NCBI RefSeq assembly: GCF_033153115.1
Contig: NW_026889796.1
Span: forward strand, 15,500,001 to 15,564,000
Direction of reading: 5' to 3'
Length of the DNA stretch: 64,000 nt
Source of the DNA: Saccostrea echinata
Lineage: Eukaryota
How positions within the stretch are numbered: the stretch's first letter is position 1; each line of letters begins with the position of its first letter. Position numbers and translations under genes: made by a program. Below, in pieces: positions 7,626 to 64,000 of the stretch. The notes beneath the pieces were generated by a model. That model searched no databases. It was not told where the DNA came from and saw nothing but the letters and a program-made list of their open reading frames with translations.

Positions 7626-10600
7626 ATGGATTATACAACCGATGACTATACTGTACCTTTGGATGGTGGAGGCATGGAACCTTTGATAAATTCTCAACGA
7701 GGTGTAACCTATTACAGTGGATTTTATGGTAAAACTGTGTACATGTATTTAGTAGAAATCTTTAAAACTGGTTCATTACTCTAAATTGCAAAGTTTAAAG
7801 GTCTACAAGATAGTAGATTTTTTTCCCATATGACAGACATTTAAGATTAAAACAATTATATTCTTTAACATAAGAAATTTTTGTATATTTGAATTATGAA
7901 ATATTTGATTTTTTTAAATTCATACATAAATCTTGCTTGATAAAATCTTGAAAACAAAGAAGCAATGTCTATAATTTATTTAAGAATTACAGCTATATAG
8001 AATAATCATCTAATATTATTCCATCCGATCTCCTTTAAACTGTCAGCTCGCCAATTCTCGAAACTTGTTAATGCTTGGTTTTTTGTCAATCTAGTCTATA
8101 CCCATAGTAATCTTTTATAAAGACAGGGACGTAAAACTTTAATTCCTTAGCGGACATCAATTTATCAAAGGGCCATTTTGAATCTTGCAAATTAGCTAAT
8201 ATTTTTATTCAAAAATAAAAAAAATAAATAAATAAATAAGAAAGTGCAAAACATACAAGAATTCTGAGACAATATTTCATTATTTTACTGGGCGTTTCAT
8301 TTCTGTGGATTATTTACGATAAGAAATATCGTGTTTAAGTCCTATAGAATACATGCAATCTTAAGCTTTAATCTTTTTTTCTTTTTTTTTTTGTGAACGT
8401 GCATTTTTAGTAAATACCAACAAATCTCAGTACCTTTTTAAATAATAATAACAATAATTAATAAAGGATTACAATAATTATTTCAATTATTACTTGACAA
8501 TGTGAGCAAAATTTGCTACTTCATAAACGAATCATATTTGCATTAGCTTTAGAATTTTAAGTAAATGTTAAAAGTTACGTCGATGGTCCATCCAGATACC
8601 AATTAAACTTACTTCCATAAACAAAAGGCAAGAAGATTAAAAATATACAGGTATTAACAATTATTTTGATTTAAAAAAAAACATTCATCATGCTAATTCT
8701 GATTAGCACACGATGAATGTGAATAGTAATCCGAATTAACGGATATCCGGGAGATTTATTATGCAAGGGGGAAAATTGCTATATAGTAAAATTGTCCCGG
8801 GAAAAAAGTTTGCTATATAGTAAAGTATCCGGAAGGACTGTTTGCTATATAACAATAATTCCGAGGGGGGACTTTATCATAAACATTCCTGAAGAAGGTT
8901 TGCTATGCGGAAGGCTTTTATATGAACCGGAATTCAAGATATTAAAAAAAGTTTCCTATTAAATCGAACTGGTAACAATAATTGCTAAAAAAGTTTCATA
9001 GTGAGACAACAGTGCTGACTTTTAATACTTTTAAATGCACAAAATAAAAAAAAAATAATAGAAGAATCTAAATGTTTTTAACTGCATACAATTTTTCTTC
9101 AATGTCAAGCTGTTCATACTGTAGAAATAAGGTAACTTAATTTTTAGTTTTTTTTTGTTATCAATTTTATAGGTATCAATAACTGATTTCAACTACATGA
9201 AGATTATGTTCCTTATTATCAGATGTACAATATATATTTTGCCAACCTCCCCTTCTCTCTCTCTACTGTCATGTTGTCATGCCACCTGTTACAAGATGAC
9301 TCTGCCGTGTATATTTGTACATATTTAAGGAATAACTGTCTAATTTTTTGGATTCATGATGTGATCAATCGAGTGGCTTGCGTGATAATTTGCATAAACG
9401 CCGAAGGCGTTTATGCATAAAATTATCACGCAAGCCAATCGATTGATCATCGTCATGAATCCAAAAAATCTGACAGTTATTCCTTATATTTACATGCTCC
9501 TGATTCTGCAAATTCCCGTGCTAATAGCCCCGCTTCTGTCTCTATTTGTCCCGCCCCGCACGTGATTTTTTTTAACCGCGCCTATCGATGAACCAGTAGA
9601 TTTATGTAGAAATAAAATATTTTTACAACTTGTAATTTTATCTCGGACAAAGACATTGGAAATGTAAATATATGAGTATAAAGCACGACATATTACATTC
9701 ACAGAGGACAACGGTGAGGACGTTTTGAATCTACACACTTTAAATGGAGAGTCCGATGGCGACACTGATTCAGGTATTGTGTTAAACCTCAAACATTACA
9801 GGTATTAAAAAACTTACCAATAAGGAGGGAAAAAAATACGTCAAAAAGACTTAAATCAATCTAGGAGAAGAGTTCATGGAAACATTTACGTACAATAGAC
9901 AAATAACAAAAATATTTATAAAGATGTGAAGAGTTTACAAGACGTTTGTCAATTTATATACAGTAAATTATCAAATATATCGTGTGGGTAAAAAAATAAG
10001 AACAATTTTTTATGACTTTGTCTAGCATTGTACCTCAGAAACTTAAGCTTTGGTTAGTATAGTTTTACTCGAGTAAAAATAATATACCTGGGTACCAGGG
10101 CCCTGATTTACAAGAGAACTTATGGGACCAAAATTTAAAATTTGTGAATTACTTTCTTCCTTACATTTATTAAGCTAAAGTTTTTGGTCTTAGTCGTAAG
10201 TTCTTTTGTAAAACTTGGGCCCTGACAGATAAAAATTAAAGTACAGTGTGGAAAAAAAGTCTGTATAATTCATTAAAAGATAACTGGTGATCGATCAAGT
10301 TGATATCGCTGATTACATTCTTTTTTATGCCCCCGTATCGAAGATTCGGGGGTATATAGTTTTTGCCCTGTCCGTCCGTCTGCCTGTCTGTCTGTTTGTC
10401 TGCAAAAACATTAACATTGCCCATAACTTTTGATTGGTGGGAGCTACGGCTTTCATATTTCACAAGTGTATTCCTTGTGACAAGACCTTTCTTTGGGTAC
10501 CACCATATTTGACCTTTTGACCTTGACCTTGGAGTTTGACCCAGTTTTGCAAAATTTTATCCAACTTTAACCTTGGCCATAACTTTTGAATAATTGGTGC

Positions 10601-10673
10601 TAGGGCTTTCATACTTCACACGTGTAATCCTTGTGACAAGTCCTTCCTTTGGATACCAACAGCTTTGACCCTC

Positions 10674-10704
<31 letters not shown>

Positions 10705-10819
10705 GAAAAACTTCAACATTGGACATAACTTTTGAACGATTGGTGCTTCAGCTTTCATACTTCACATATGTAATTCTCGTGATAAGACCTTCCTTTGAAT
10801 ACTAACAACTTTGACCCTT

Positions 10820-10850
<31 letters not shown>

Positions 10851-13800
10851 GAAAAATTTTAACCTTGGCCATAACTTTTGAACCGTTGGTGCTAGGCCTT
10901 TCATACTTCACTTATATAATCCTTGTGACAAGTCCTACCTTTGGATACCAACAACTTTGACCCTTTGACCTTGGAGTTTGACCTACATTTGAAAAACTTT
11001 AACCTTGGCCATAACTTTTGAACCGTTGGTGCTATGGCTTTCATACTTCACATATGTAATCCCTGTGACAAGACCTTTCTTTGGATACCAACAATTGTAA
11101 TCCATTGACCTTGACCTTGATGTTTGACTTACTTTTGAAAAACTTTAACCTTTTCTATATCTATTCAATGGTTGCTTCTAGGGTTTTCATATTTCACAGG
11201 TATATTCCTCGAGACAAGACCTTACTTGGGGTATCAACATATTTGATTTGCATTAGAGAAAGTTTTACCATTGCTATAAGTTGTCATACGGGGGCATCAC
11301 AAACAAATCTTGTTTTCAGATGAAACTGATGAAGAAGAACAAAATGAACTTTCACGAAACGAAGCCAAAATAATCATAACAATACTACCAGGTAAATAAA
11401 ATACGGCTCTGTGTATATTATAATATGCATCCAGACATAAGTTTCTTTGACCTGCGATCCTTCTGTCATATTTTCATTTTACCTCTAGAGGACATCATAG
11501 TGCGTAGAAATTACATATTCCTCAAGGAGGAGCTGTCAGCCGGATATATATGCCCTTTTCTGTATCAGGAGGGGATCCTTTCTGATCATGATCTTGACAT
11601 AGCTTGTAGTCCCAATCCCAGATGTGTACAGCTGGATATACTGCTGAAACTTCTGCTCCGCCACGGGAGATCTGCATGCAACAAATTTGTCAACATCTTA
11701 TCAGCAAGCGGATATGGTTACATTCTTCATACTTTAAAAAATACAAAGGACTTTAAAACCAAAGAAGGTAATTATGTTTGGTATATAAAATGTGTCTTTC
11801 TTAAATTGTTCTTTAGTTTTTCTTAATAACATAATATCAAATACTGTGTATATCTTTACATAAACAGAACTTAATACGCATCTCCTTTTTTATAGATTGC
11901 TCACAGTGGCAAAGTGATATAACAATACACCATATAAACATGGAAGAAACATTCCTGTGCAAAACCATTGAAGCAATCTCCATCGCTGATTTCATGTTAC
12001 AAGAGCTACTAGACGACAAATTCTCTCTTTATGACCATGACGAGATCCAAAATCAGAATTCGAAATCGAGGCGGTCTAGAGCTCTTCTTAAGAAGGTTAT
12101 AAAAGATGACCCTGTCGTTTTGAACTGCTTCCTTTGCGCTGTCGACTGCTTACGTCATGTGTTACCCGGGGTGTCAGTCATCGAACATATGAAGAAAACA
12201 AACCTCAGCAAGACAAGAGGTAAACGTCTAATTACCATAAATTTAAGAGGGGTCGCTATAGTAGTAAAATATAAATTTAAAAAGTACATTTAATTACATG
12301 ATAAGAAGGATGCTTTATTTGACAAACACGATTTTATTTTTCCCACAGGTGGTAGTGAAAAACATGTCAGTGTGTTATTCCAAGATGAGCATTTGCTGAA
12401 AGTGGTCGATGGTAAGACAAACAGGTTCCAAAATCTATGTGTGTTTAAGTGAAAAGTTTTTCTCTAACTTGAGTTCTATAACTTTGTAATCGACAATAGA
12501 CACAGTGCTTGCAGAGTGTCTATTGACAATTAAAAGATTAAGGAACTCGAGCTGGGAGAAAAACCGGTGACTAACAAGCAGATATTATGGAACCATTTTC
12601 TCCCTTTACTTTACTAAAATTCTTCAAAACTTTGCCTATCTGAACATTACTACTGAAAGAAGCAAAAAGAAATATAACGTAGCACAACGGAACCGCATAA
12701 TAGGTGTAGCTATAGCCTAATGGGAGAAAAATGTTTTTTAAACTTTGATTTACATGGTTATATATGAGTCGCATCTGCTCTCGAGATAACTGTCAAATTT
12801 TCTTCCTTTTGACATATTTGACATGGTTTCATTTACAGTGAACTGTGAAGATGACGATGGTGACCATGTACTCATTTTCAAATTCAGAAATCAACATCTG
12901 CGGAAAATACAGGAATTGGAAAAGGTGCTAGTGCGCAGAATCCAAAACAATGATTCAAAACTAGATGAACTGGCCATCAGATTCATGCATATGAGCATAC
13001 AGGATGGCCATGCCGGGTCCATAGTTCTATATTTGAAGGCCCTGACAAGTACTGCAGCAGAGAACCTGGACAAAAACAGTTTGAAGACGTTTATCCAGAA
13101 GATTCTCCAGGATTCTCAAATCTTGGGACTCCTTCCATTGGGAACTCTACAGCTTCAAGTAGAAACAATAACAAGTGGATTCATGGAAGGTTCTATCCTG
13201 TATATTACTGTGAAATCATCATTGTTCGTGGGGACCAATGTTCGTGAATTTAAACCTTATCCACCATTATTTTGTAATCGTTTGATTCATTGAATCTAGA
13301 GTAAACGAGTTACCCACGAAATTACATCACCGCAAACCAGTAAAGTTTTGCTCAACCACGACATAATGACTCCTCACGAACTAAAATGATTCCACAGTAT
13401 TATGCCTGCACTTTCTAAGAAATTTAGATGTTTTTTTTTATTTCGATACCAGTCACAAGGGTTTCCAAGAGGCAAATATTTGCTTGCCTTTGACTATGTC
13501 ATGTAGAAGTGTATTCGAATTTCTGTCTCTCTCCTCGAGCTCCGAATGGACCTAAAAGGGTGTGGTTTCTTGTAAAAGGTCGTCTTTGAAACTCTCTGCA
13601 TTCTGTTGTTTAAAAATCAACTGTTATATACCTATAAAATAGTTGTGCTAAGGATGCAGATATGTTATAAGTATACATGTAGGATGCAGAAGTGACCCTT
13701 ATTTAATGTTTGATAATTTAGCATGGTAGGTTTAGCAGGTTTATTTCCATTTAGTAATGTTGATAAAACTTGCATTGATTATAAAACTGAATTAAGATTC

Positions 13801-16408
13801 AGATTCTTCCCCAGACCAGAATATTGGATCAAAAATCAGGTATTTCTTTTTACTACTATATCATCTACAGGTGACTATCGGATAATGGGACAACCATTTG
13901 ATTCTGAGGAGGGGGCAGATTTTGGAAATAATCTGTTCTCGAAAATACACTTGTATGTTGAAAATAAATAAACCGACCTTAAGTTGCAAGAAATTAAATA
14001 ATTTAACTCGAAAACATTTGCCATCCCCCACCCCTTCTCAAAATCAAGTGGTCGTCTGCTAAAAGTTTTATGAGCGGCCCTGTCTCTTAGTATTTATTAG
14101 TCAAGTACTGACGAATCTTACATAATCCAAATTGAACTTTAGTCCATAGGGTAGGTCCCAAGCCAGAAGATACCAGGTATTTTTAACCATAGTTTACCGC
14201 TTGTGTGTTTTGTTTGACATTAACAAAAGAATTTTCAAAAATCTTAAATGAGGTTTAAATTTAATTTCTTTAATGGATTGAAAGGAAAGCAATGGGAAGT
14301 CGACAGAAGTTCTCTGGTTGAGTTACTTGCAGACAACAGAACAATATTGGAGGACGAGTTAGAACCATTTCGTTTTCTTACACGCTTCCAACAAGATGGC
14401 ATATTTTCAGAGAAAGAGGTAAACTGGATTAAGAGGCTGGGTAGTAGGCGAAATAGAGCAAGAGGATTCCTCAGTTTATTGCAAGGCAAGAGAAAGTCTG
14501 CTTTGGAAGTCTTTGTGGACGAATTAAAAATATCAAAAGAAACTTTTATATTGGAGCAGCTATTTCCTTCGACACCCACAGCTTTTCAGTGCAAAGGTAG
14601 AGTGATTAGAAATTGTTGTATGTAGCCTGAATTTGGTTTTCATTATTATATTAACTTTATTTCCTAAAAGTGAAGTTACTGCAACAAATTCTAAAGAACT
14701 TTTATTTTAAATTCACAAAGAAAAGTCATACAACAGCAAGACCTTGCGTCCAAATGAACTTGCAATCGGGATTTAAAGTCATTAGCCCCATTTCCTAGCT
14801 AAACTTTTAAAAGAAGCTGTGTACAACTATATAATTGTATTACAGAATGCCAACGTAGTACAATCTTAAAGAATTACAACGAGATTCGCGATGAAATAGA
14901 TGTGAGAATTTTAGACTACACTGATCCGCCCTGTCACTCACACCACACGAATTATAAAGACAGCAGGGGACGGTACAGAACGCCCCAGGCCCTCCTTAAG
15001 CATGTGCTGGAGTGTGACACAGCTCTGGACAGATTCAGTAAGGTCTCTAAATCCATAACATCATTGACCAGGTTTACAGAATGCAACTGCAACTGTCCAG
15101 GTATTATACTGAGGCTTTGGGCATCTTAGATTGTGTCTTATCCACTGCATTGGGAGATTACATCCGACTTTTCTTAGCAGGTTACAAGAACTTTACAACT
15201 TTAACCCAGAGGAAGCAAAATGTTTACAATTTTCGGATTTCAACTGTATTACGGAAGAAAGGTTAGTTAAGCACTCTACTTTCTACAAGATCATTTCCGA
15301 TTTTCTTCTTTGTCGAAATGTGTATTCTGGCTTTCATTAAATGACTTTTTATGTACTGCATAACCAATTTCTTAACTGGGTATATGTGAGCCAGCACACC
15401 CGCCCTCTTCCACTCCAATAATGATGTTGACCTGTGCAACTTACTTTGTGTCAAGTTACAACTACCTTATCAGGTACAATATTTCAAAGTTTCTATGTTG
15501 AACGATATGAAAGTCCATACTTTTTCTGCACAATTCCTTTCACTTGTCCAAATGGCGTTTCTCGGTCAAGGTCAGGACACATATACATATCGTTCATACA
15601 AAAATTACCATAGTTTTAGCTGGCATTTCCTCAAAATTTATTTTGGAAGGTGTACTACATCATTTAGCAAAACAAAAGTTGCACAAAGGTCCTCCATTTA
15701 TTGGAACTGCAGTAGGGAATTACATATATTTTTTTGTGATCATGTTCTTGCACTTAAGTCAACGTCTTGATGCAACTTTGGAGCGTAAGCAATCCCTATC
15801 TAAAGTATGAGCTTCGTATCCTCGACACAAAGTTAAACACTAAAATAAAATATATCACTTTTTGGCCATTAATCTTCACCTTTTAAACTTGGGTGTTGGA
15901 GTTGATTAAGCAATTAAAACTGAACGAAACTTGAGCAGCTCTTGTCCACCAACATTGGAAAATTTATTTAGCTCTCTGTCTCATATCTTAATACAGAGAA
16001 ACCAACTGACAAAAAAACATTACATAACTCTCCAGAAAAAGATTTACCAGTCCCTGCATTAAAAAGGGAAAAGTCCTCTCTAACAAACAGTATGTATTTT
16101 AATTCAAGAATATTTTAATTAAGTGTACTTTAATTCATGAACATTTAAAAAAAAAAAAACCCTCACTTTTTATCTATTAGCATATAAATTGTTCATTATA
16201 AATGCTATCAATTATCTCCCTTTTTTCTCCTGCAGAAACAGTCAAAACAAAAACCCCCTTTACATCTCTACAACCAAAGATTGTCACCTTTAATGTAGAA
16301 GAATTGCCTGTCCATTCCTACACAACAGAAAATAGAGGACTTCATGATACCAAGATTCAAGAGAAGAAAACAAGCAAACGTGCAACAAAAAAGATGGTGA
16401 AAAAATAA
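7626..16408 (+). CDS. Multi-CARD (death-fold) protein, ~700-770 aa. Core exons 11320-11391, 11489-11767, 11896-12219, 12349-12411, 12839-13189, 14285-14596, 14846-15100; probable 7626-7728, 9705-9773, 15181-15261, 15997-16089, 16236-16408; possible 15650-15784
   Basis: Every internal exon is bounded by AG/GT, is a multiple of 3 and is phase 1-1. CARD-like translations: IVRRNYIFLKEEL...LYQEGILS...LLKLLLRHG...FVNIL; LLADNRTILEDELEP...QQDGIFSEKE...RRNRARGFLSLL...FVDELK; plus two more divergent ones. The first and last exons are less certain. Confidence 0.75.
9326..9487. repeat. Fold-back palindrome (~160 bp)
   Basis: TAAGGAATAACTGTC...GCATAAACGCCGAAGGCGTTTATGC...GACAGTTATTCCTTA. Confidence 0.88.
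10325..11313 (-). mobile_element. Non-autonomous Helentron-like (HINE) element with an internal ~146-bp tandem array
   Basis: Subterminal inverted repeat ATGCCCCCGTAT/ATACGGGGGCAT, hairpin CCCCGTATCGAAGATTCGGGG, (GTCC/GTCT)n tract, repeated GACCTTGACCTTGGAGTTTGACC; inserted in a T-run. Confidence 0.85.
12456..12565. repeat. Imperfect fold-back palindrome
   Basis: GTTTTTCTC...CAATAGACAC..loop..GTGTCTATTG...GAGAAAAAC. Confidence 0.65.
13206..13399. mobile_element. Short Tc1/mariner-type MITE
   Basis: TACTGTGAAATCAT...TTCGTG / CACGAA...ATGATTCCACAGTA, TA-flanked. Confidence 0.7.
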
Positions 16409-16773
16409 CCAGCTGTTTAATGCATTGACTGGAATATACAATAAGATTGCTGTGATCTCTAAATTGGATACTTCTTTTTTCTGAAATTATACAAGAAGAA
16501 TTGGCTGCCGCTTTATTTGATTTTATTTTAAATATAGGTAACCTCTTTGTAAGATCAATTTGTGAAAAGTTGCCTAAGATAAATGAAATCCTTAAAAAAA
16601 TTGGTACTTATTTGTTAACAGAATTTATAAAACTACATATATATACATGATTGTAAACATGTTTTTTTTAATTCATGTATAAAGATTGAATATTGCATAA
16701 GCTATATATCCATTCCTGGAAATGTCCCTTTCCCCCAAGAAATATAATATAAACAACTGTCATAAGCCCAGAA

Positions 16774-19700
16774 TCACTGACTACTGTTCATCATTAGAAT
16801 TCTCCTTTTTCTTTCTGTCTCCATAGTTTTAGCTTTCTCCCATACACTTTGTGTTGGGGCAGTTTCCATAGCACTTAGTGACAACAACCTATCGGTGAAT
16901 GAAAATGAATATTGTTAATTGATAAAAACATTGTTGATATACATGTATCTAAATAAGGCCAGAGCATGACACTTCAAATACTAAAGGGCCATGGGAGACA
17001 TCACTCACCTGAGCACTGTGGCTAGGAAAAAAGCAAAAATCAGTTCAGTATTGAAAAGCTTAAATGCATAAGTGGTCCCAACCTACCCCTAAATGGGGGA
17101 TTGGGGAGGATAATTTGAACAAAATTGAATCCACACTAACTAAAGATGCTTACATATTTCTTTGACTAACTGTTGCTTTTTTCCCTACAAGTTTGAACTT
17201 TCATTGTGGTCCCACTCTACCCCTGAGGGTCATGATTCATACAAACTTGAATCTACACTACCTGAAGACGTTTCCATATGACCAATCATGGCTTTGCTGT
17301 TCTTGAGAAGAAGATTTTTCCTTTATATTCCATGTAAAACTCTGATCATCGACTGTGACCCCATCCTATCCCTGGGAATCATGATTTGAACAAATATGAA
17401 TCTACACTACCTGAGGAATCTTCCATATAAATATGACCAATCATGGCTTTGCTGTTCTTAAGAAGAGGATTTTTTAAGATTTTTCCTATGTACTCCTATG
17501 TCAAACTTTGATCATCCATTGTGGCCCCACTCTTGCCTCAGGGTCATGATTTGAACAAACGAATTTACACTACTTGAGGATACTTCCATATAAATATGAC
17601 CAATCATGGCTTTGCTGTTCTTGAGAAGAAGATTTTTAAAGATTTTTCCTATGTACTCCAATGTTAAATTTTGATCGTTCATTGATCCTATACCCTATCC
17701 CGGGTGATCACGATTTGAACAAACTTGAATCTACACTATCTGAGGATGCTTCCATATAAATATGACCAATCATGGCTTTGCTGTTCTTAAGAAGAAAATT
17801 TTTAAAGATTTTTCCAACATTTTCCTTTGTAAAAGATTTTTCCTTTATACTCCTACGTAAAATTTTGATCGTTCATTGTGGCTCTACCCTACCCCAGGTG
17901 TCATGATTTGAACAAACTTGATTATCCTTCGTCCTCTTACGTACATTCATAGCTAAATATGCAGTATCCAGCGCATGCGCAGATAATGACCACTAATTCA
18001 TAGAAACAATAAAAGTTTTCCCGCCACTACCCATCATAGTTAATTCAGTGCTCGCTCAGAGAAGACCACCCGCGTTGTGTATCCAGTTTCTTTTTGTTTT
18101 TTACGTATTTGTGGACATTTTCATCTGTTATTTTTATTTTATTACTTTATTATGGATGAAAATCAGGAATATATTATAATTCAACATCGTTCGGACTCAC
18201 CAAGTTCACGTTCTGAGAAGAAATCGACGGCGACGGACCAAGAGATGCTGGCGCCATTAGTTAACATGGCAGGGCACGCTGCCTCAGAGCAGTTGACTAA
18301 AGTGCCCACAGAGGCTTCAATGCCAAACAATTGTGGTTCAAATCCCACCTTTTCTGTGGCATTGCCACAACTGAGCAACGCTAGCTCAAATATTGGAGTT
18401 CATTTCTCGCAACAAATTCAGGCAGAGGATGGGTGTAATTCGATTTTTCCTTTATACTCCTACGTAAAATTTTGATCGTTCATTGTGGCTCTACCCTACC
18501 CCAGGTGTCATGATTTGAACAAACTTGAATCTACACTATCTGAGGATGATTCTTGAGAAGAAGATTTTTAAAAGATGCCAATAATTTTTCCCTAATTTGT
18601 AATTATCTCCCCTTGAAGAGGGTGTGGAACAAACTTGAATCCCCTTCACCCTAGGATACTCTGTGCTAAGTTTGGTTCAATCTGGTAAAGTGGTACTGGA
18701 GAAGATGAAATTGTGAAAAGTTAACAACGACTATGACAATGACAGACAACGGATAAATTTCGATCAAAAAAGCTCACTTGAGCCTTTGGCTCAGGTGAGC
18801 TAAAAGTGTTAAAAATTCTGTATTATCAATACCTGACTAAATTCAACAATGTGTGAAAGTCATCCACTGACATTGATTTTGGATCTGTCTTCCTTATTTC
18901 TACAAAGTCATCTTGGATTGACTGAAATGTTAAAAGAAAATTAGCATTAACTTGCATACCTCTAAGAAACTGTTGAATGCTAGTAGATATTCCAGTTCTT
19001 TCATTCTTATCATATTATTTACCTTTTGCATGGTGTCATCAATTGTGTATTCCAGAAGTTTACAAATGGTCAGATAACTCCTCAAACGACCCAGAAATTC
19101 CGCAGTGAGAAGGACATCAAGCTGTGAGAAATGTCGCTGTAGATTTTCTATTTTACAGGCTGGGTTCATAGGTACCAAACAATCACTCTGCAATGATAAT
19201 GATGTATTTAACCATAACTATTCATAATTTTAAACATGGATTTTGAATTATTAAAATAACACTTTATTTCTAATTATTTTATCACATTTGTTTTTTGGTT
19301 GACATCAACAATACAAAGAGCAGTTCCAAAGTTCAAAGTCTAATAAAGTAAAAGTCAAGGTCATACGCAATGTACATGTGAGAGAGGTCTGCTAGCAGAT
19401 GTTGCCTTATTTTACATACTTACTGGTATCAAGATATATACTTACTGGTAAGATAGACTTTGCTTCAGATAAAATCAGAACGGAAACATTGGATAAGAAA
19501 TCTTGTCTATGGAAGCGAAAATCATATTCCACCTTCTGCCAACTAATCAGGTTTCCAAGAGCTGTAATGTTCCTCACTCCTGAAAAGATGAGAAAATTAA
19601 ATCAACAATTGAATATCAAGTAACACTTCAACAAAGCTATGTTTGGATCTGAATTTTGTAATCTTGCAGAAACACTGAAAATTTGCTTCAATAATGACCA

Positions 19701-62082: not shown

Positions 62083-63287
62083 CAAAAGAGCAGACAACTT
62101 TCACTCATGCCCATTCTTTGGCCCGGAACATGAAAGCCCGCATGAAACAGGCGTTGTTAACGTGCAAGTATGTCCTGTCTCGTAACAAAATTATAAAAAG
62201 CTATGTATTCAGTGAGCCAATTATGAGCGACTGATTTCTTTTAAAGTTATTGACTTACTTGATTTAAACATACTATAGTATTTCTTAATATAATTTCATG
62301 TAAATTACTTGAATCTGACTCGTTGTGGAAAATTTTATTTTAAAAAATGCTACCCTCTGCGATAAAACCATGCCTTGAAGCGTGATAGAACGTAGCAACA
62401 GTCAACATTGATCGAGAAACCACGCCTTCCGGCGTGATAGAACGTAGCAACGGTCTACATTAATTGACGACGGGTGATATTCCAAAAAAAAAAGTACTGA
62501 CTGCACAGAATTTATGTGCTAACGGTTCATTAAATATAATTAAGATTGCATTTAGTTGAGGGTAACAATGAACTTCTTCATCCCTCGGAAACAGTTTTCA
62601 ATGTCGGCCGCCCCTCCATTCATGATAACTTATGGCTTTGTTCAATGTTTGCCCTACATGTATTTTTTATATTATGTTCAGTAGTATGGATTTTAGGTAA
62701 TTGTACATCGAATAATGCTACATTTTCATCAAGTGATACATGTAAGTCTCCAAGCTGGTTTTAAATCATTTAAAAGTATTTAAAAAATAATGAATAAGGT
62801 TATAGACAAATGTTTATTTTCGATTTTTCAAATTCAAGACATCAATATACTTGATGACTATTAACGATAGTAAAAACCAAAATTCATTGACCGAGGCAAA
62901 TGGTTCAATCAATCTGCTCATGCATTCTCAACTTGTTTGACCAGCTCGTGTATGTTACAGTTAAGGGCGTTTGTTTTGATCCATCATAGTTTAATTGTCC
63001 TTTCATGTGAATATTTACACGTAGGTCGAATCGAACTATTAGTTTTATTTGAAATAATCCTTTGAATATCATGATTTTACTTATGGCAAAAATCTTGTCG
63101 CGAGCCCATTGCAGAGGTGTCTGAGAGAGGAACGAATGACAACTCAGCAAGGGAGATTCAAGGCTGTTAACTTCTGTAGAGGCGTCGGAACCGGGGGAGG
63201 GGATGGGGATGGTAGACATAACATAGGCATTGAAATTTGGGGCTTATAGCCCCCATACGGTTTTTATTTGGTTTAGCCCCCATTTCT

Positions 63288-64000
63288 ATGTCCCCGTATC
63301 GAAGATTCGGGGTTATGTACACTGTAGTTTTTGCCTTATCCGTCCATCTGGCTGTCTGTTTGTCCGCAAAAACTTTATCATTGTTCATAACATTTGATTG
63401 GTTGGAAGTATGGCTTTCATATTTCACATGCGTATTCCTTGTGACAAGACCTTTCTTTGGGTACGATCATATTTGACCTTGACCATGGAGTTTGACCCAG
63501 TTTTGAAAAAAATTACTGAACTTTAACCTTGGCAATATCTTTTGAACAATTAGTGCTAGGAATTTCATACTTCACATGTGTAATTCTTGTGACAAGACCT
63601 GTTTTTGGATATCAACAACTTTGACCCTTTGACCTTGAGCTAGGAGTTTGACCTACTTTTGAAAAACTTTAACCTTGGCCATAACTTCTGAACGGTTGGT
63701 GCAAGGGCTTCCATACTTCACATATGTTATTCTTTTTACAAGACATTCCTTTTGATACCAACAGCTTTAACCCTTTGACCTTGACCTAGGAGTTTTACAT
63801 ACTTTAAAAAAAATAATCTTGGCCATAATTTTTGAACGGTTGGTGCTAGGGCTTTCATACTTCACACATGTAATTCTTGAGACAAGACCTTTCTTTCGGA
63901 TATCAACAACTTTGACCCTTTGACCTTGACCTTGGAGTTTGGCCTACTTTTGAAAAACTTAAACCTTTGCCATAATTTCTTGAACGATTGGTACTACGGC
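63288..64000 (-). mobile_element. Second copy of the same HINE family, cut off by the window end
   Basis: Same hairpin CCCCGTATCGAAGATTCGGGG and same ~146-bp internal repeat as 10325-11313. Confidence 0.85.

What the first reader, a model, noticed from the sequence alone, without database searches (positions are those of the whole stretch)
9705..16408. Modular CARD-CARD-X-CARD-CARD protein with one domain per symmetric phase-1 exon
Seen: three clear and one degenerate CARD-like domains, each encoded by its own phase 1-1 exon (279, 324, 312 and 255 nt). They surround a 351-nt exon encoding an alpha/beta domain with a GSIVLYL motif. No NACHT, caspase, kinase or TIR domain is visible. The N-terminus is acidic and the C-terminus basic. 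Established: death-fold domains mediate homotypic innate-immune and apoptotic assembly, and class 1-1 exons are the typical shuffling modules. Inference: an undescribed scaffold or decoy with combinatorial splice isoforms; the middle domain may be TRADD-N- or SEA-like.
Basis: partly seen in the sequence, partly recalled or inferred. Interest (0 to 1): 0.75.

Follow-up and report, generated by a model that had tools for sequence, protein, structure and literature searches.

The report
Oyster multi-CARD adaptor with TRADD-N-like core
This is a real, expressed oyster gene whose protein strings three or four caspase-recruitment (CARD) modules around a small alpha/beta domain that looks like the docking domain of the cell-death adaptor TRADD, so it is probably a lineage-specific immune or cell-death adaptor that has not been tested.

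Summary
On the + strand there is a multi-exon gene. It is RefSeq XP_061194349.1, "uncharacterized protein LOC133202527", Saccostrea echinata.

**Exons.** All have AG/GT borders and all are phase 1-1.

**RNA support.** Spliced RNA contigs join the 351-nt exon to the two exons after it and on to the tail. They also show one 93-nt cassette exon, included or skipped.

**CARD domains.** Three exons encode CARDs. A profile of the family's CARDs matches the Apaf-1 CARD at about E 1e-10. The fourth exon is a divergent, shortened CARD relative (profile-profile P 1e-4, no Pfam hit).

**Middle domain.**
- It models at low confidence as a beta-alpha-beta-beta-alpha-beta plait.
- A Gly-Ser pair at the strand 2-3 turn is invariant in 18 of 18 relatives. 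This matches the hallmark of TRADD-N domains and the SEA self-cleavage motif.
- Protein-language-model searches with two members point to TRADD-like_N.
- Pfam, profile and fold searches do not confirm it.

**Family.** At least seven loci in this genome carry this domain, mostly next to CARD exons.

**Verdict.** This is a new variant of the known bivalve "death-fold plus TRADD-N" adaptor class. The 5' end is unresolved. No CARD-exon skipping was seen.

The parts
7626..7701 (+). Possible first coding exon (ATG, acidic, donor in phase 1). Untested.
   Evidence: Read from the sequence and translated. It is the only upstream ATG-bearing frame I found that ends in phase 1 before a GT. No RNA or homology support.
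9705..9773 (+). E1, 69 nt, phase 1-1, acidic (net -7), no ATG in frame. Predicted only.
   Evidence: AG/GT borders and open frame. Not covered by the reads call and not in the RefSeq model.
11320..11391 (+). E2, 72 nt, phase 1-1, acidic (net -5). Predicted only.
   Evidence: AG/GT borders and open frame. Depth was 0 in the bin 11300-11471 in all 4 runs, which proves nothing for so short an exon.
11425..11427 (+).
   Evidence: P0001 begins 21 residues before E3. Position.
11489..11767 (+). E3, 279 nt, CARD 1.
   Evidence: Pfam CARD 18.5 bits, E 0.0021, below cut-off. Its paralogue exon scores 39.9 bits. RNA contig over 11541-11749.
11896..12219 (+). E4, 324 nt, CARD 2.
   Evidence: Pfam CARD 17.5 bits, E 0.0042, below cut-off. 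The ortholog fragment P0002 scores 27.7 bits. RNA contig over 11920-12076.
12349..12411 (+). E5, 63 nt, short strand-like linker exon before the middle domain.
   Evidence: AG/GT borders, phase 1-1. Present in P0001 and conserved in P0002, whereas the read-through intron text around it is not.
12839..13189 (+). E6, 351 nt, middle alpha/beta domain X (TRADD-N/SEA-like plait).
   Evidence: AF2 beta-alpha-beta-beta-alpha-beta, pLDDT 62 and 66. ESM Atlas TRADD-like_N clusters. Family alignment A8. RNA contig from 12838.
13015..13020 (+). Invariant Gly-Ser (residues 59-60 of the E6 product) at the predicted strand 2-3 turn.
   Evidence: Invariant in 18 of 18 sequences. Position in the models.
14285..14596 (+). 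E7, 312 nt, CARD 3.
   Evidence: Pfam CARD 34.7 bits, E 1.9e-8, above cut-off. Joints 13189|14285 and 14596|14846 in RNA contigs of 2 runs.
14846..15100 (+). E8, 255 nt, divergent shortened CARD-like domain.
   Evidence: No Pfam family. Fourth-domain alignment A6 against CARD alignment A7: hhalign probability 56, P 1.1e-4, 82 columns. Counterparts in the paralogue and in L027/L030.
15178..15261 (+). E9, 84 nt, basic linker. RNA uses the acceptor at 15178 and RefSeq uses 15181 (tandem AG acceptors).
   Evidence: Joint 15100|15178 in 2 runs. P0001 lacks the extra residue.
15997..16089 (+). E10, 93 nt, phase 1-1 cassette exon.
   Evidence: Included (joints 15261|15997 and 16089|16236) in runs X1 and X2. 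Skipped (15261|16236) in X1 and X3. Absent from P0001.
16236..16408 (+). E11, last coding exon, basic tail, stop codon at 16406-16408.
   Evidence: Translation. RNA contigs run on past 16450.

Best explanation
The locus is an expressed gene of the oyster Saccostrea echinata for a cytosolic adaptor without any enzyme domain. The protein has two CARDs, then a small alpha/beta plait domain, then a third CARD, then a shortened CARD-like domain and a basic disordered tail.

I read the middle domain as a divergent member of the TRADD-N kind. In that kind, the exposed sheet with its Gly-Ser turn docks a partner; in TRADD the partner is the MATH domain of TRAF2. The CARDs would recruit CARD-bearing partners by like-with-like assembly. 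The protein would then link an upstream signal to CARD-dependent effectors such as CARD caspases or Apaf-1-like and BCL10/MAVS-like proteins.

**Shown:** the exon structure, splicing of E6 to E11, the three CARDs, a family of at least seven such loci, and the invariant Gly-Ser.

**Inferred:** TRADD-N kinship, the partners, and any role in immunity or cell death.
For: **Exons and gene model**
- Exon geometry.
- A public protein model, P0001 (633 aa), joins E3-E4-E5-E6-E7-E8-E9-E11.
- Spliced contigs carry GT..AG joints from E6 to E11.

**CARDs**
- Pfam hits.
- Profile A7 against solved chains: Apaf-1 CARD E about 9e-11, then CARD11, NOD1, RAIDD, ICEBERG and caspase-9.

**Middle domain**
- Two AF2 models give the same beta-alpha-beta-beta-alpha-beta order.
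- G59-S60 is invariant in 18 of 18 sequences down to 17% identity.
- Kaur et al. give a tiny-residue-Ser motif in the strand 2-3 turn as the hallmark of TRADD-N, with Ser67 of TRADD contacting TRAF2 (passage).
- ESM Atlas first hits for two members that are 21% identical (0.94 and 0.95) are the same cluster, in which 18% of members carry TRADD-like_N; other listed hits are clusters with higher shares.
- The oyster DEDD TRADD-like_N exon has the same G-S-I-V at the aligned place.

**Family**
- Seven X loci in the genome.
- X is followed by a Pfam-supported CARD exon in 4 of the 7: the window, the C47 paralogue, L027 and L014.
- The C47 paralogue keeps the whole order CARD, CARD, X, CARD, fourth domain.
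- Orthologue fragments are 63-75% identical in exons, while read-through intron text is unalignable.
Against: **Against TRADD-N kinship**
- No TRADD-N model hits the domain: 0 of 18 members at E up to 10.
- Genome scans with PF20694 and PF13820 find other loci and not these.
- hhalign against a DEDD-clade alignment gives P 0.1 and probability 0.55 out of 100.
- Profiles A1 and A8 find no TRADD chain among solved structures.
- The models are of low confidence (pLDDT 62 and 66).
- Fold searches return only generic ferredoxin-like folds, and no TRADD appears in any list of 50.
- The ESM Atlas gives no alignment or E-value.

**Other gaps**
- E3 and E4 are below the Pfam cut-off on their own.
- The CARD exons were not folded, so the six-helix test was not run.
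- E3-E5 are not linked to E6 by any contig.
- The 5' end and start codon are unknown.
- No partner, localisation or induction data exist.
Confidence: 0.55

Rival explanations
1. Decoy or brake. A CARD-rich protein without an effector could cap or soak up CARD filaments, as CARD-only proteins such as ICEBERG do for caspase-1. The degenerate fourth CARD would act as a non-propagating end.
For: No enzymatic domain on P0001. The family CARD profile also matches ICEBERG at E 1.6e-6. The fourth domain has lost part of the helix 2-3 region relative to the other CARDs (alignment A5).
Against: The middle domain and its invariant Gly-Ser are conserved across 7 loci, which a simple decoy would not need. 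Adaptor and decoy cannot be told apart from sequence alone.
Confidence: 0.2
2. Self-cleaving tripwire. X would be an intracellular SEA-type module that cuts itself between Gly and Ser at the strand 2-3 hairpin. The two halves would stay together until pulled apart or degraded, which would free the C-terminal half with its CARDs. The logic resembles FIIND-CARD in CARD8/NLRP1.
Against: The SEA Pfam model hits 0 of 18 members and does not hit these loci in the genome scan. No SEA appears in the top 50 for the better model. The same G-S-I-V is found in DEDD, which is not known to me to self-cleave (recalled). SEA domains are extracellular, whereas this protein is flanked by CARDs. Cleavage depends on strain, which sequence cannot show.
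Confidence: 0.12
3. A decaying or mis-annotated member of a fast-evolving gene family with no function of its own.
For: The fourth CARD is degenerate. The RefSeq start lies in a putative intron. Only 3 proteins at E below 1e-10 were found among 1.84 billion representatives.
Against: All frames are open, the splice sites are canonical, the RNA is spliced, and exon-specific conservation is seen in related species and in a 28-35% identical paralogue with the same order.
Confidence: 0.05

Closest known systems
Bivalve lineage-specific Death-like + TRADD-N proteins (Kaur, Iyer, Burroughs, Aravind 2021, PMC8195603)
   Same: A small RRM-like domain with a tiny-residue-Ser turn is joined to Death-superfamily domains. 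The genes are expanded in oysters, and architectures vary between paralogues.
   Different: The text I read names DED as the usual partner, placed before TRADD-N, with effector domains after it. Here the partners are CARDs on both sides and there is no effector. The domain escapes all three TRADD-N Pfam models. Their architecture tables are supplements and I could not see them.
Vertebrate TRADD (TRADD-N followed by a Death domain)
   Same: The order is plait domain, then a death-fold domain, in an adaptor without an enzyme.
   Different: There is a CARD in place of the Death domain, with two extra CARDs in front. There is no sequence match to TRADD_N. TRADD itself was reported absent from lophotrochozoans (PMC11463336, passage).
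DEDD/DEDD2 (DED + TRADD-like_N)
   Same: The same Gly-Ser-Ile-Val turn is at the aligned position. The oyster has its own DEDD orthologue (L009, 45.6 bits).
   Different: Profile-profile P is only 0.1. DEDD has a DED before the domain and no CARD.
SEA domain
   Same: The same generic plait, with a G-S-hydrophobic motif in the strand 2-3 loop.
   Different: No Pfam SEA hit and an intracellular context. The structural match is not reproducible between the two models.
Tandem-CARD proteins (RIG-I/MDA5 2CARD) and Apaf-1 CARD
   Same: Bona fide CARDs, with the best profile match to Apaf-1 CARD. There are two CARDs in tandem at the front.
   Different: No helicase or NB-ARC domain. The CARDs are split by the plait domain.

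Membership tests
CARD (Pfam PF00619) | Match to the family profile above the curated cut-off | tested here: met
   E7 scores 34.7 bits against a cut-off of 23.9. P0001 has 3 stretches, 52.6 bits. E3 (18.5) and E4 (17.5) are below the cut-off alone, but their relatives L006 (39.9) and P0002 (27.7) pass. Profile A7 matches Apaf-1 CARD at E about 9e-11.
CARD (Pfam PF00619) | Six-helix death fold | not tested
CARD, for the fourth domain (E8) | Profile match to CARD | tested here: inconclusive
   No Pfam family for E8 or for its 3 counterparts. hhalign A6 against A7 gives probability 56, P 1.1e-4, over 82 columns. Profile A6 finds no CARD among solved chains.
TRADD-N superfamily | RRM-like two-layer alpha+beta sandwich with a four-stranded sheet | tested here: inconclusive
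   Both AF2 models give beta-alpha-beta-beta-alpha-beta, but at pLDDT 62 and 66. Fold searches give only generic ferredoxin-like hits.
TRADD-N superfamily | Conserved tiny-residue-Ser motif in the strand 2-3 turn (Kaur et al., passage) | tested here: met
   G59-S60 is invariant in 18 of 18 sequences. It lies between the second and third strands of both models.
TRADD-N superfamily | Match to PF20694, PF09034 or PF13820 | tested here: not met
   0 of 18 members match at E up to 10. Genome scans with PF20694 and PF13820 hit only the DEDD and NCOA6 loci.
TRADD-N superfamily | Significant profile-profile match to a known clade | tested here: not met
   A3 against the DEDD-clade alignment A4 gives P 0.1 and probability 0.55 of 100. 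The alignment is colinear over 109 columns with the Gly-Ser aligned. Only one clade was tried.
TRADD-N superfamily | Fusion to Death-superfamily domains | tested here: met
   CARD exons flank X in the window and the C47 paralogue and follow X in L027 and L014.
TRADD-N superfamily | Binds a MATH/TRAF partner through the sheet | not testable with these tools
   Needs binding assays.
SEA domain | Match to PF01390 | tested here: not met
   0 of 18 members match. The genome scan hits 3 other loci only.
SEA domain | G-S-V-V-V-type motif in the strand 2-3 loop | tested here: met
   The motif is G-S-I-V-L in the window, G-S-V-V-I in the paralogue and L027, and G-S-I-I-I in L032. The motif definition comes from the PMC6954182 passage.
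SEA domain | Autoproteolysis with halves that stay associated | not testable with these tools
   Needs the protein.
SEA domain | Extracellular, membrane-proximal context | not tested
   I ran no signal-peptide or membrane-helix predictor. By eye, the exon translations show no long hydrophobic stretch, and the neighbouring domains are cytosolic CARDs.

The most novel reading that the evidence does not exclude
The middle domain is an intracellular SEA-type self-cleaving module. It would cut at the invariant Gly-Ser and hold its two halves together until force or degradation separates them, which would then release a CARD-bearing fragment that seeds signalling. That would be a second, independent invention of the 'autocleaved tripwire plus CARD' logic known from FIIND-CARD in CARD8 and NLRP1. 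It would also raise the question of whether the Gly-Ser turn of TRADD-N domains in general has a chemical and not only a binding role.
Probability: 0.12. Interest if true: 0.8.

Novelty: new variant of a known kind. Interest (0 to 1): 0.45.

Why it matters
Oysters lack a recognisable TRADD (PMC11463336, passage), yet they have greatly expanded cell-death and innate-immune gene sets.

A family that pairs a TRADD-N-like plait with CARDs would be a candidate link between TRAF-type signalling and CARD-dependent caspase or NF-kB pathways in a commercially farmed group that suffers mass mortalities.

The strict one-domain-per-phase-1-1-exon layout is repeated in paralogues with different CARD numbers. 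This makes it a clean example of exon shuffling building adaptors.

The Gly-Ser turn shared with SEA domains gives a simple, testable question about self-cleavage.

Tried and rejected
**Middle domain, sequence route**
- Pfam on the exon product and on all 18 family members gave no TRADD-N or SEA hit. The commonest weak hit was Anoctamin_N 'alpha-beta plait' in 6 of 18, best E 0.006, below cut-off.
- Profiles A1 and A8 against solved-structure sequences gave only chance-level rows.
- hhalign against the single DEDD exon and the DEDD-clade alignment was not significant.

**Middle domain, structure route**
- Two AF2 models were searched with Foldseek pdb, pdb_via and pdb_via_wide.
- SEA came first only for the poorer model. 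TRADD never appeared in a listed top 50.

**Exhaustive HMMER with the E6 product**
- 8 hits at E up to 0.001.
- P0004 is an ankyrin/NACHT protein. P0006 is a repeat protein. Both matched through short repeated stretches, and I set them aside as spurious.
- P0007 and P0008 were not examined.

**SEA comparison**
- I tried to build a SEA alignment from the oyster genome for a profile comparison. The SEA hits are split by introns and cover only model positions 2-58, so I dropped it.

**Considered and rejected**
- NLR, caspase or kinase fusion: no such domain on P0001.
- RLR/MAVS-type protein: no helicase, and no membrane anchor seen by eye.

- This means E5 plus E6 were never folded together.

- The distribution of the family in other bivalves, because full-length proteins were outside the length window.
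- The 5' end.
- Induction by pathogens.
- The supplementary architecture tables of PMC8195603.

Full report
**What is there**

The window is G000:C47:15500001-15564000 of a 923-Mb assembly. Its G+C content is 30-37%. A frame scan gives a chain of + strand exons. Each is bounded by AG and GT, and each is in phase 1-1:

| Exon | Coordinates | Length (nt) |
|---|---|---|
| E1 | 9705-9773 | 69 |
| E2 | 11320-11391 | 72 |
| E3 | 11489-11767 | 279 |
| E4 | 11896-12219 | 324 |
| E5 | 12349-12411 | 63 |
| E6 | 12839-13189 | 351 |
| E7 | 14285-14596 | 312 |
| E8 | 14846-15100 | 255 |
| E9 | 15178-15261 | 84 |
| E10 | 15997-16089 | 93 |
| E11 | 16236-16408 | ends in TAA |

**Public model**

An exhaustive HMMER search with the E6 product returned a 633-aa protein that is 100% identical over the domain (P0001). 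It is on record as XP_061194349.1, uncharacterized protein LOC133202527 of Saccostrea echinata. Its sequence is the string E3-E4-E5-E6-E7-E8-E9-E11.

**RNA**

One search for runs found six candidates holding up to 0.19 of the sampled words. I laid four of them on 11300-16450.
- All are assembled contigs, so depth means little, but the joints are clear.
- The joints are 13189|14285, 14596|14846, 15100|15178, 15261|15997 and 16089|16236. Each is GT..AG and each appears in runs X1 and X2.
- One 3457-nt contig of X2 runs from the start of E6 through E11 and on into the 3' untranslated region.
- A joint 15261|16236 in X1 and X3 skips E10, so E10 is a cassette exon.
- The E9 acceptor used in the RNA is 3 nt upstream of the RefSeq one.
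- E3 and E4 are covered by short contigs (11541-11749 and 11920-12076) that stop inside the exons. The intron bins read 0, apart from a repeat at 13192-13535.
- No contig links E3-E5 to E6. No joint skips a CARD exon.
- E1, E2 and a possible ATG exon at 7626-7701 were outside the stretch laid and remain predictions.

One argument favours upstream coding exons over the RefSeq start. In the paralogue, the open frame holding the first CARD has no ATG before the CARD. It must therefore be entered by splicing in phase 1.

**The CARDs**

- Pfam on six exon products found CARD in three: E7 34.7 bits (cut-off 23.9), E3 18.5 and E4 17.5.
- On P0001 the three stretches add up to 52.6 bits, E 4.6e-14.
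- The paralogue's counterparts score 39.9 and 32.4 bits.
- A ten-sequence alignment of the family's CARDs (A7) finds 68 solved chains at E up to 0.1. Apaf-1 CARD is the best natural match at about 9e-11. CARD11, NOD1, RAIDD, ICEBERG, caspase-9, CARD8 and NLRC4 follow.
- I did not fold any CARD exon.

**The fourth domain**

- E8 has no Pfam family and no second hit in the genome by direct search.
- By position, the paralogue has a counterpart with the same opening helix.
- Two more compact family genes, L027 and L030, have a full-length domain there. None of these three counterparts hits Pfam CARD.
- The four aligned together (A6) match the CARD alignment A7 with hhalign probability 56 and P 1.1e-4 over 82 columns.
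- In the joint alignment, E8 lacks part of the helix 2-3 region.
- 'Degenerate CARD' is therefore reasonable but not proven.

**The middle domain**

*Sequence searches.*
- In 1.84 billion representatives, only 3 proteins reach E 1e-10: the gene itself and two fragments of 75% and 64% identity. One more 31% relative reaches E 1e-7.
- Word-seeded searches add short unnamed fragments: 5 proteins, then 17 with a profile, of which 0 carry a precomputed TRADD-N family and 1 carries CARD.

*Structure.*
- AF2 on 9 and then 18 aligned sequences gave pLDDT 62 and 66, with the same order strand-helix-strand-strand-helix-strand.
- No TRADD chain was listed in any search.

*Evidence pointing to TRADD-N.*
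1. Kaur et al. define the superfamily by an RRM-like fold and a conserved tiny-residue-Ser motif in the strand 2-3 turn. G59-S60 of X is invariant in 18 of 18 sequences that fall to 17% identity, and it lies at that turn.
2. The domain always sits among death-fold domains.
3. The ESM Atlas first hit, for X and for a 21%-identical relative, was the same cluster at 0.94 and 0.95. In that cluster 18% of members carry TRADD-like_N. Other listed hits were clusters with higher shares, and all ten best family-bearing hits agreed. The tool itself warns that this is a lead and not a test.
4. The oyster's own DEDD exon (PF20694, 45.6 bits) has Gly-Ser-Ile-Val at the place that aligns with Gly-Ser-Ile-Val of X.

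*Evidence against it.*
- 0 of 18 members hit PF20694, PF09034 or PF13820.
- Genome scans with two of these models miss the loci.
- The profile-profile P is 0.1.

I put TRADD-N kinship at about 0.6.

**SEA alternative**

SEA domains cleave themselves at GSVVV or GSIVA in the loop between strands 2 and 3 (PMC6954182, passage). The halves stay bound (PMC10556640, passages). X reads G-S-I-V-L, and its relatives read G-S-V-V-I, G-S-I-I-I and G-S-V-I-L. This is the basis of the novel reading. It has no support from Pfam SEA.

**Family**

Profile searches of the genome find 7 loci with X:
- **The window.**
- **C47 at 1.14 Mb.** The order is CARD 1.157 Mb, CARD 1.150 Mb, X 1.141 Mb, CARD 1.139 Mb, fourth domain 1.136 Mb, on the minus strand.
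- **C56 at 8.116 Mb (L027).** CARD, X, CARD, fourth domain within 2.2 kb.
- **C41 (L014/L029).** X then CARD.
- **C25 (L030).** X, a CARD by alignment only, then the fourth domain.
- **C56 at 20.64 Mb (L032).** X, then a CARD-looking frame with no Pfam hit.
- **C56 at 8.143 Mb (L039).** No CARD frame was seen in the 1.5-kb flank. A CARD2-like frame lies 5 kb upstream.

In the two paralogues I checked, every domain frame has a pyrimidine-rich AG acceptor and a GT donor available in phase 1. These sites are predicted and have no RNA support.

**Literature**

- Kaur et al. 2021 (PMC8195603; passages and section 11 read) describe oyster expansions of NCOA6- and DEDD2-clade TRADD-N proteins with a Death-like domain, 'usually DED', plus effector domains.
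- In its main text, CARD occurs 4 times and never with TRADD-N.
- Its architecture tables are supplements that I could not open, so a CARD-TRADD-N entry there cannot be excluded.
- Searches brought up no paper on a CARD-flanked TRADD-N protein in molluscs. I saw the other hits as listings only.
- PMC11463336 (passages) reports no TRADD in lophotrochozoans.
I did not test it.

**Verdict**

The gene is a new variant of a known class of invertebrate death-fold adaptors, with an open and testable question about its central domain.

Noticed in passing
window 10404-11246 (also 63170-63473, and L014 929-1150): Intron 1 holds a tandem array (period 146/286, 82% matches). Its translated frames recur near the window's end and beside another family locus, so it is probably a common oyster repeat or MITE-derived satellite.
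   Followed up: no
window 9340-9470: A near-perfect long inverted repeat (hairpin of roughly 60-nt arms) lies about 250 bp upstream of E1, followed by a GC-rich stretch with CACGTG at about 9550-9565. It could be a MITE or part of the promoter region.
   Followed up: no
window 13192-13535: An intronic stretch with high summed contig depth in all four runs, many loose ends and irregular joints. It looks like a transcribed dispersed repeat and not part of this gene.
   Followed up: no
window 16253: All four runs read C where the assembly has A. In the E11 frame this changes Thr to Pro. It is either a polymorphism or an assembly error.
   Followed up: no
window 16409 to about 18600: RNA contigs that carry E9-E11 run on for about 2.1 kb past 16450. 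This means either a long 3' UTR or an overlap with the next open frame at 18044-18472.
   Followed up: no
window 15176-15183: Tandem AG acceptors 3 nt apart at E9. The RNA contigs use the upstream one and RefSeq the downstream one, a difference of one residue.
   Followed up: partly
L009 (C25:3134467-3134640) and L010 (C35:1904274-1904447): The oyster DEDD TRADD-like_N exon occurs twice with identical 114-aa open frames on two contigs. C35 is only 1.96 Mb long. This is either a retained haplotig or a recent duplication.
   Followed up: no
   Followed up: no
L027 (C56:8114056-8117397): A compact relative packs CARD, X, CARD and the fourth domain into 2.2 kb with introns of about 80-420 nt, against 5 kb in the window. 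It would be a handy template for cloning the family.
   Followed up: partly
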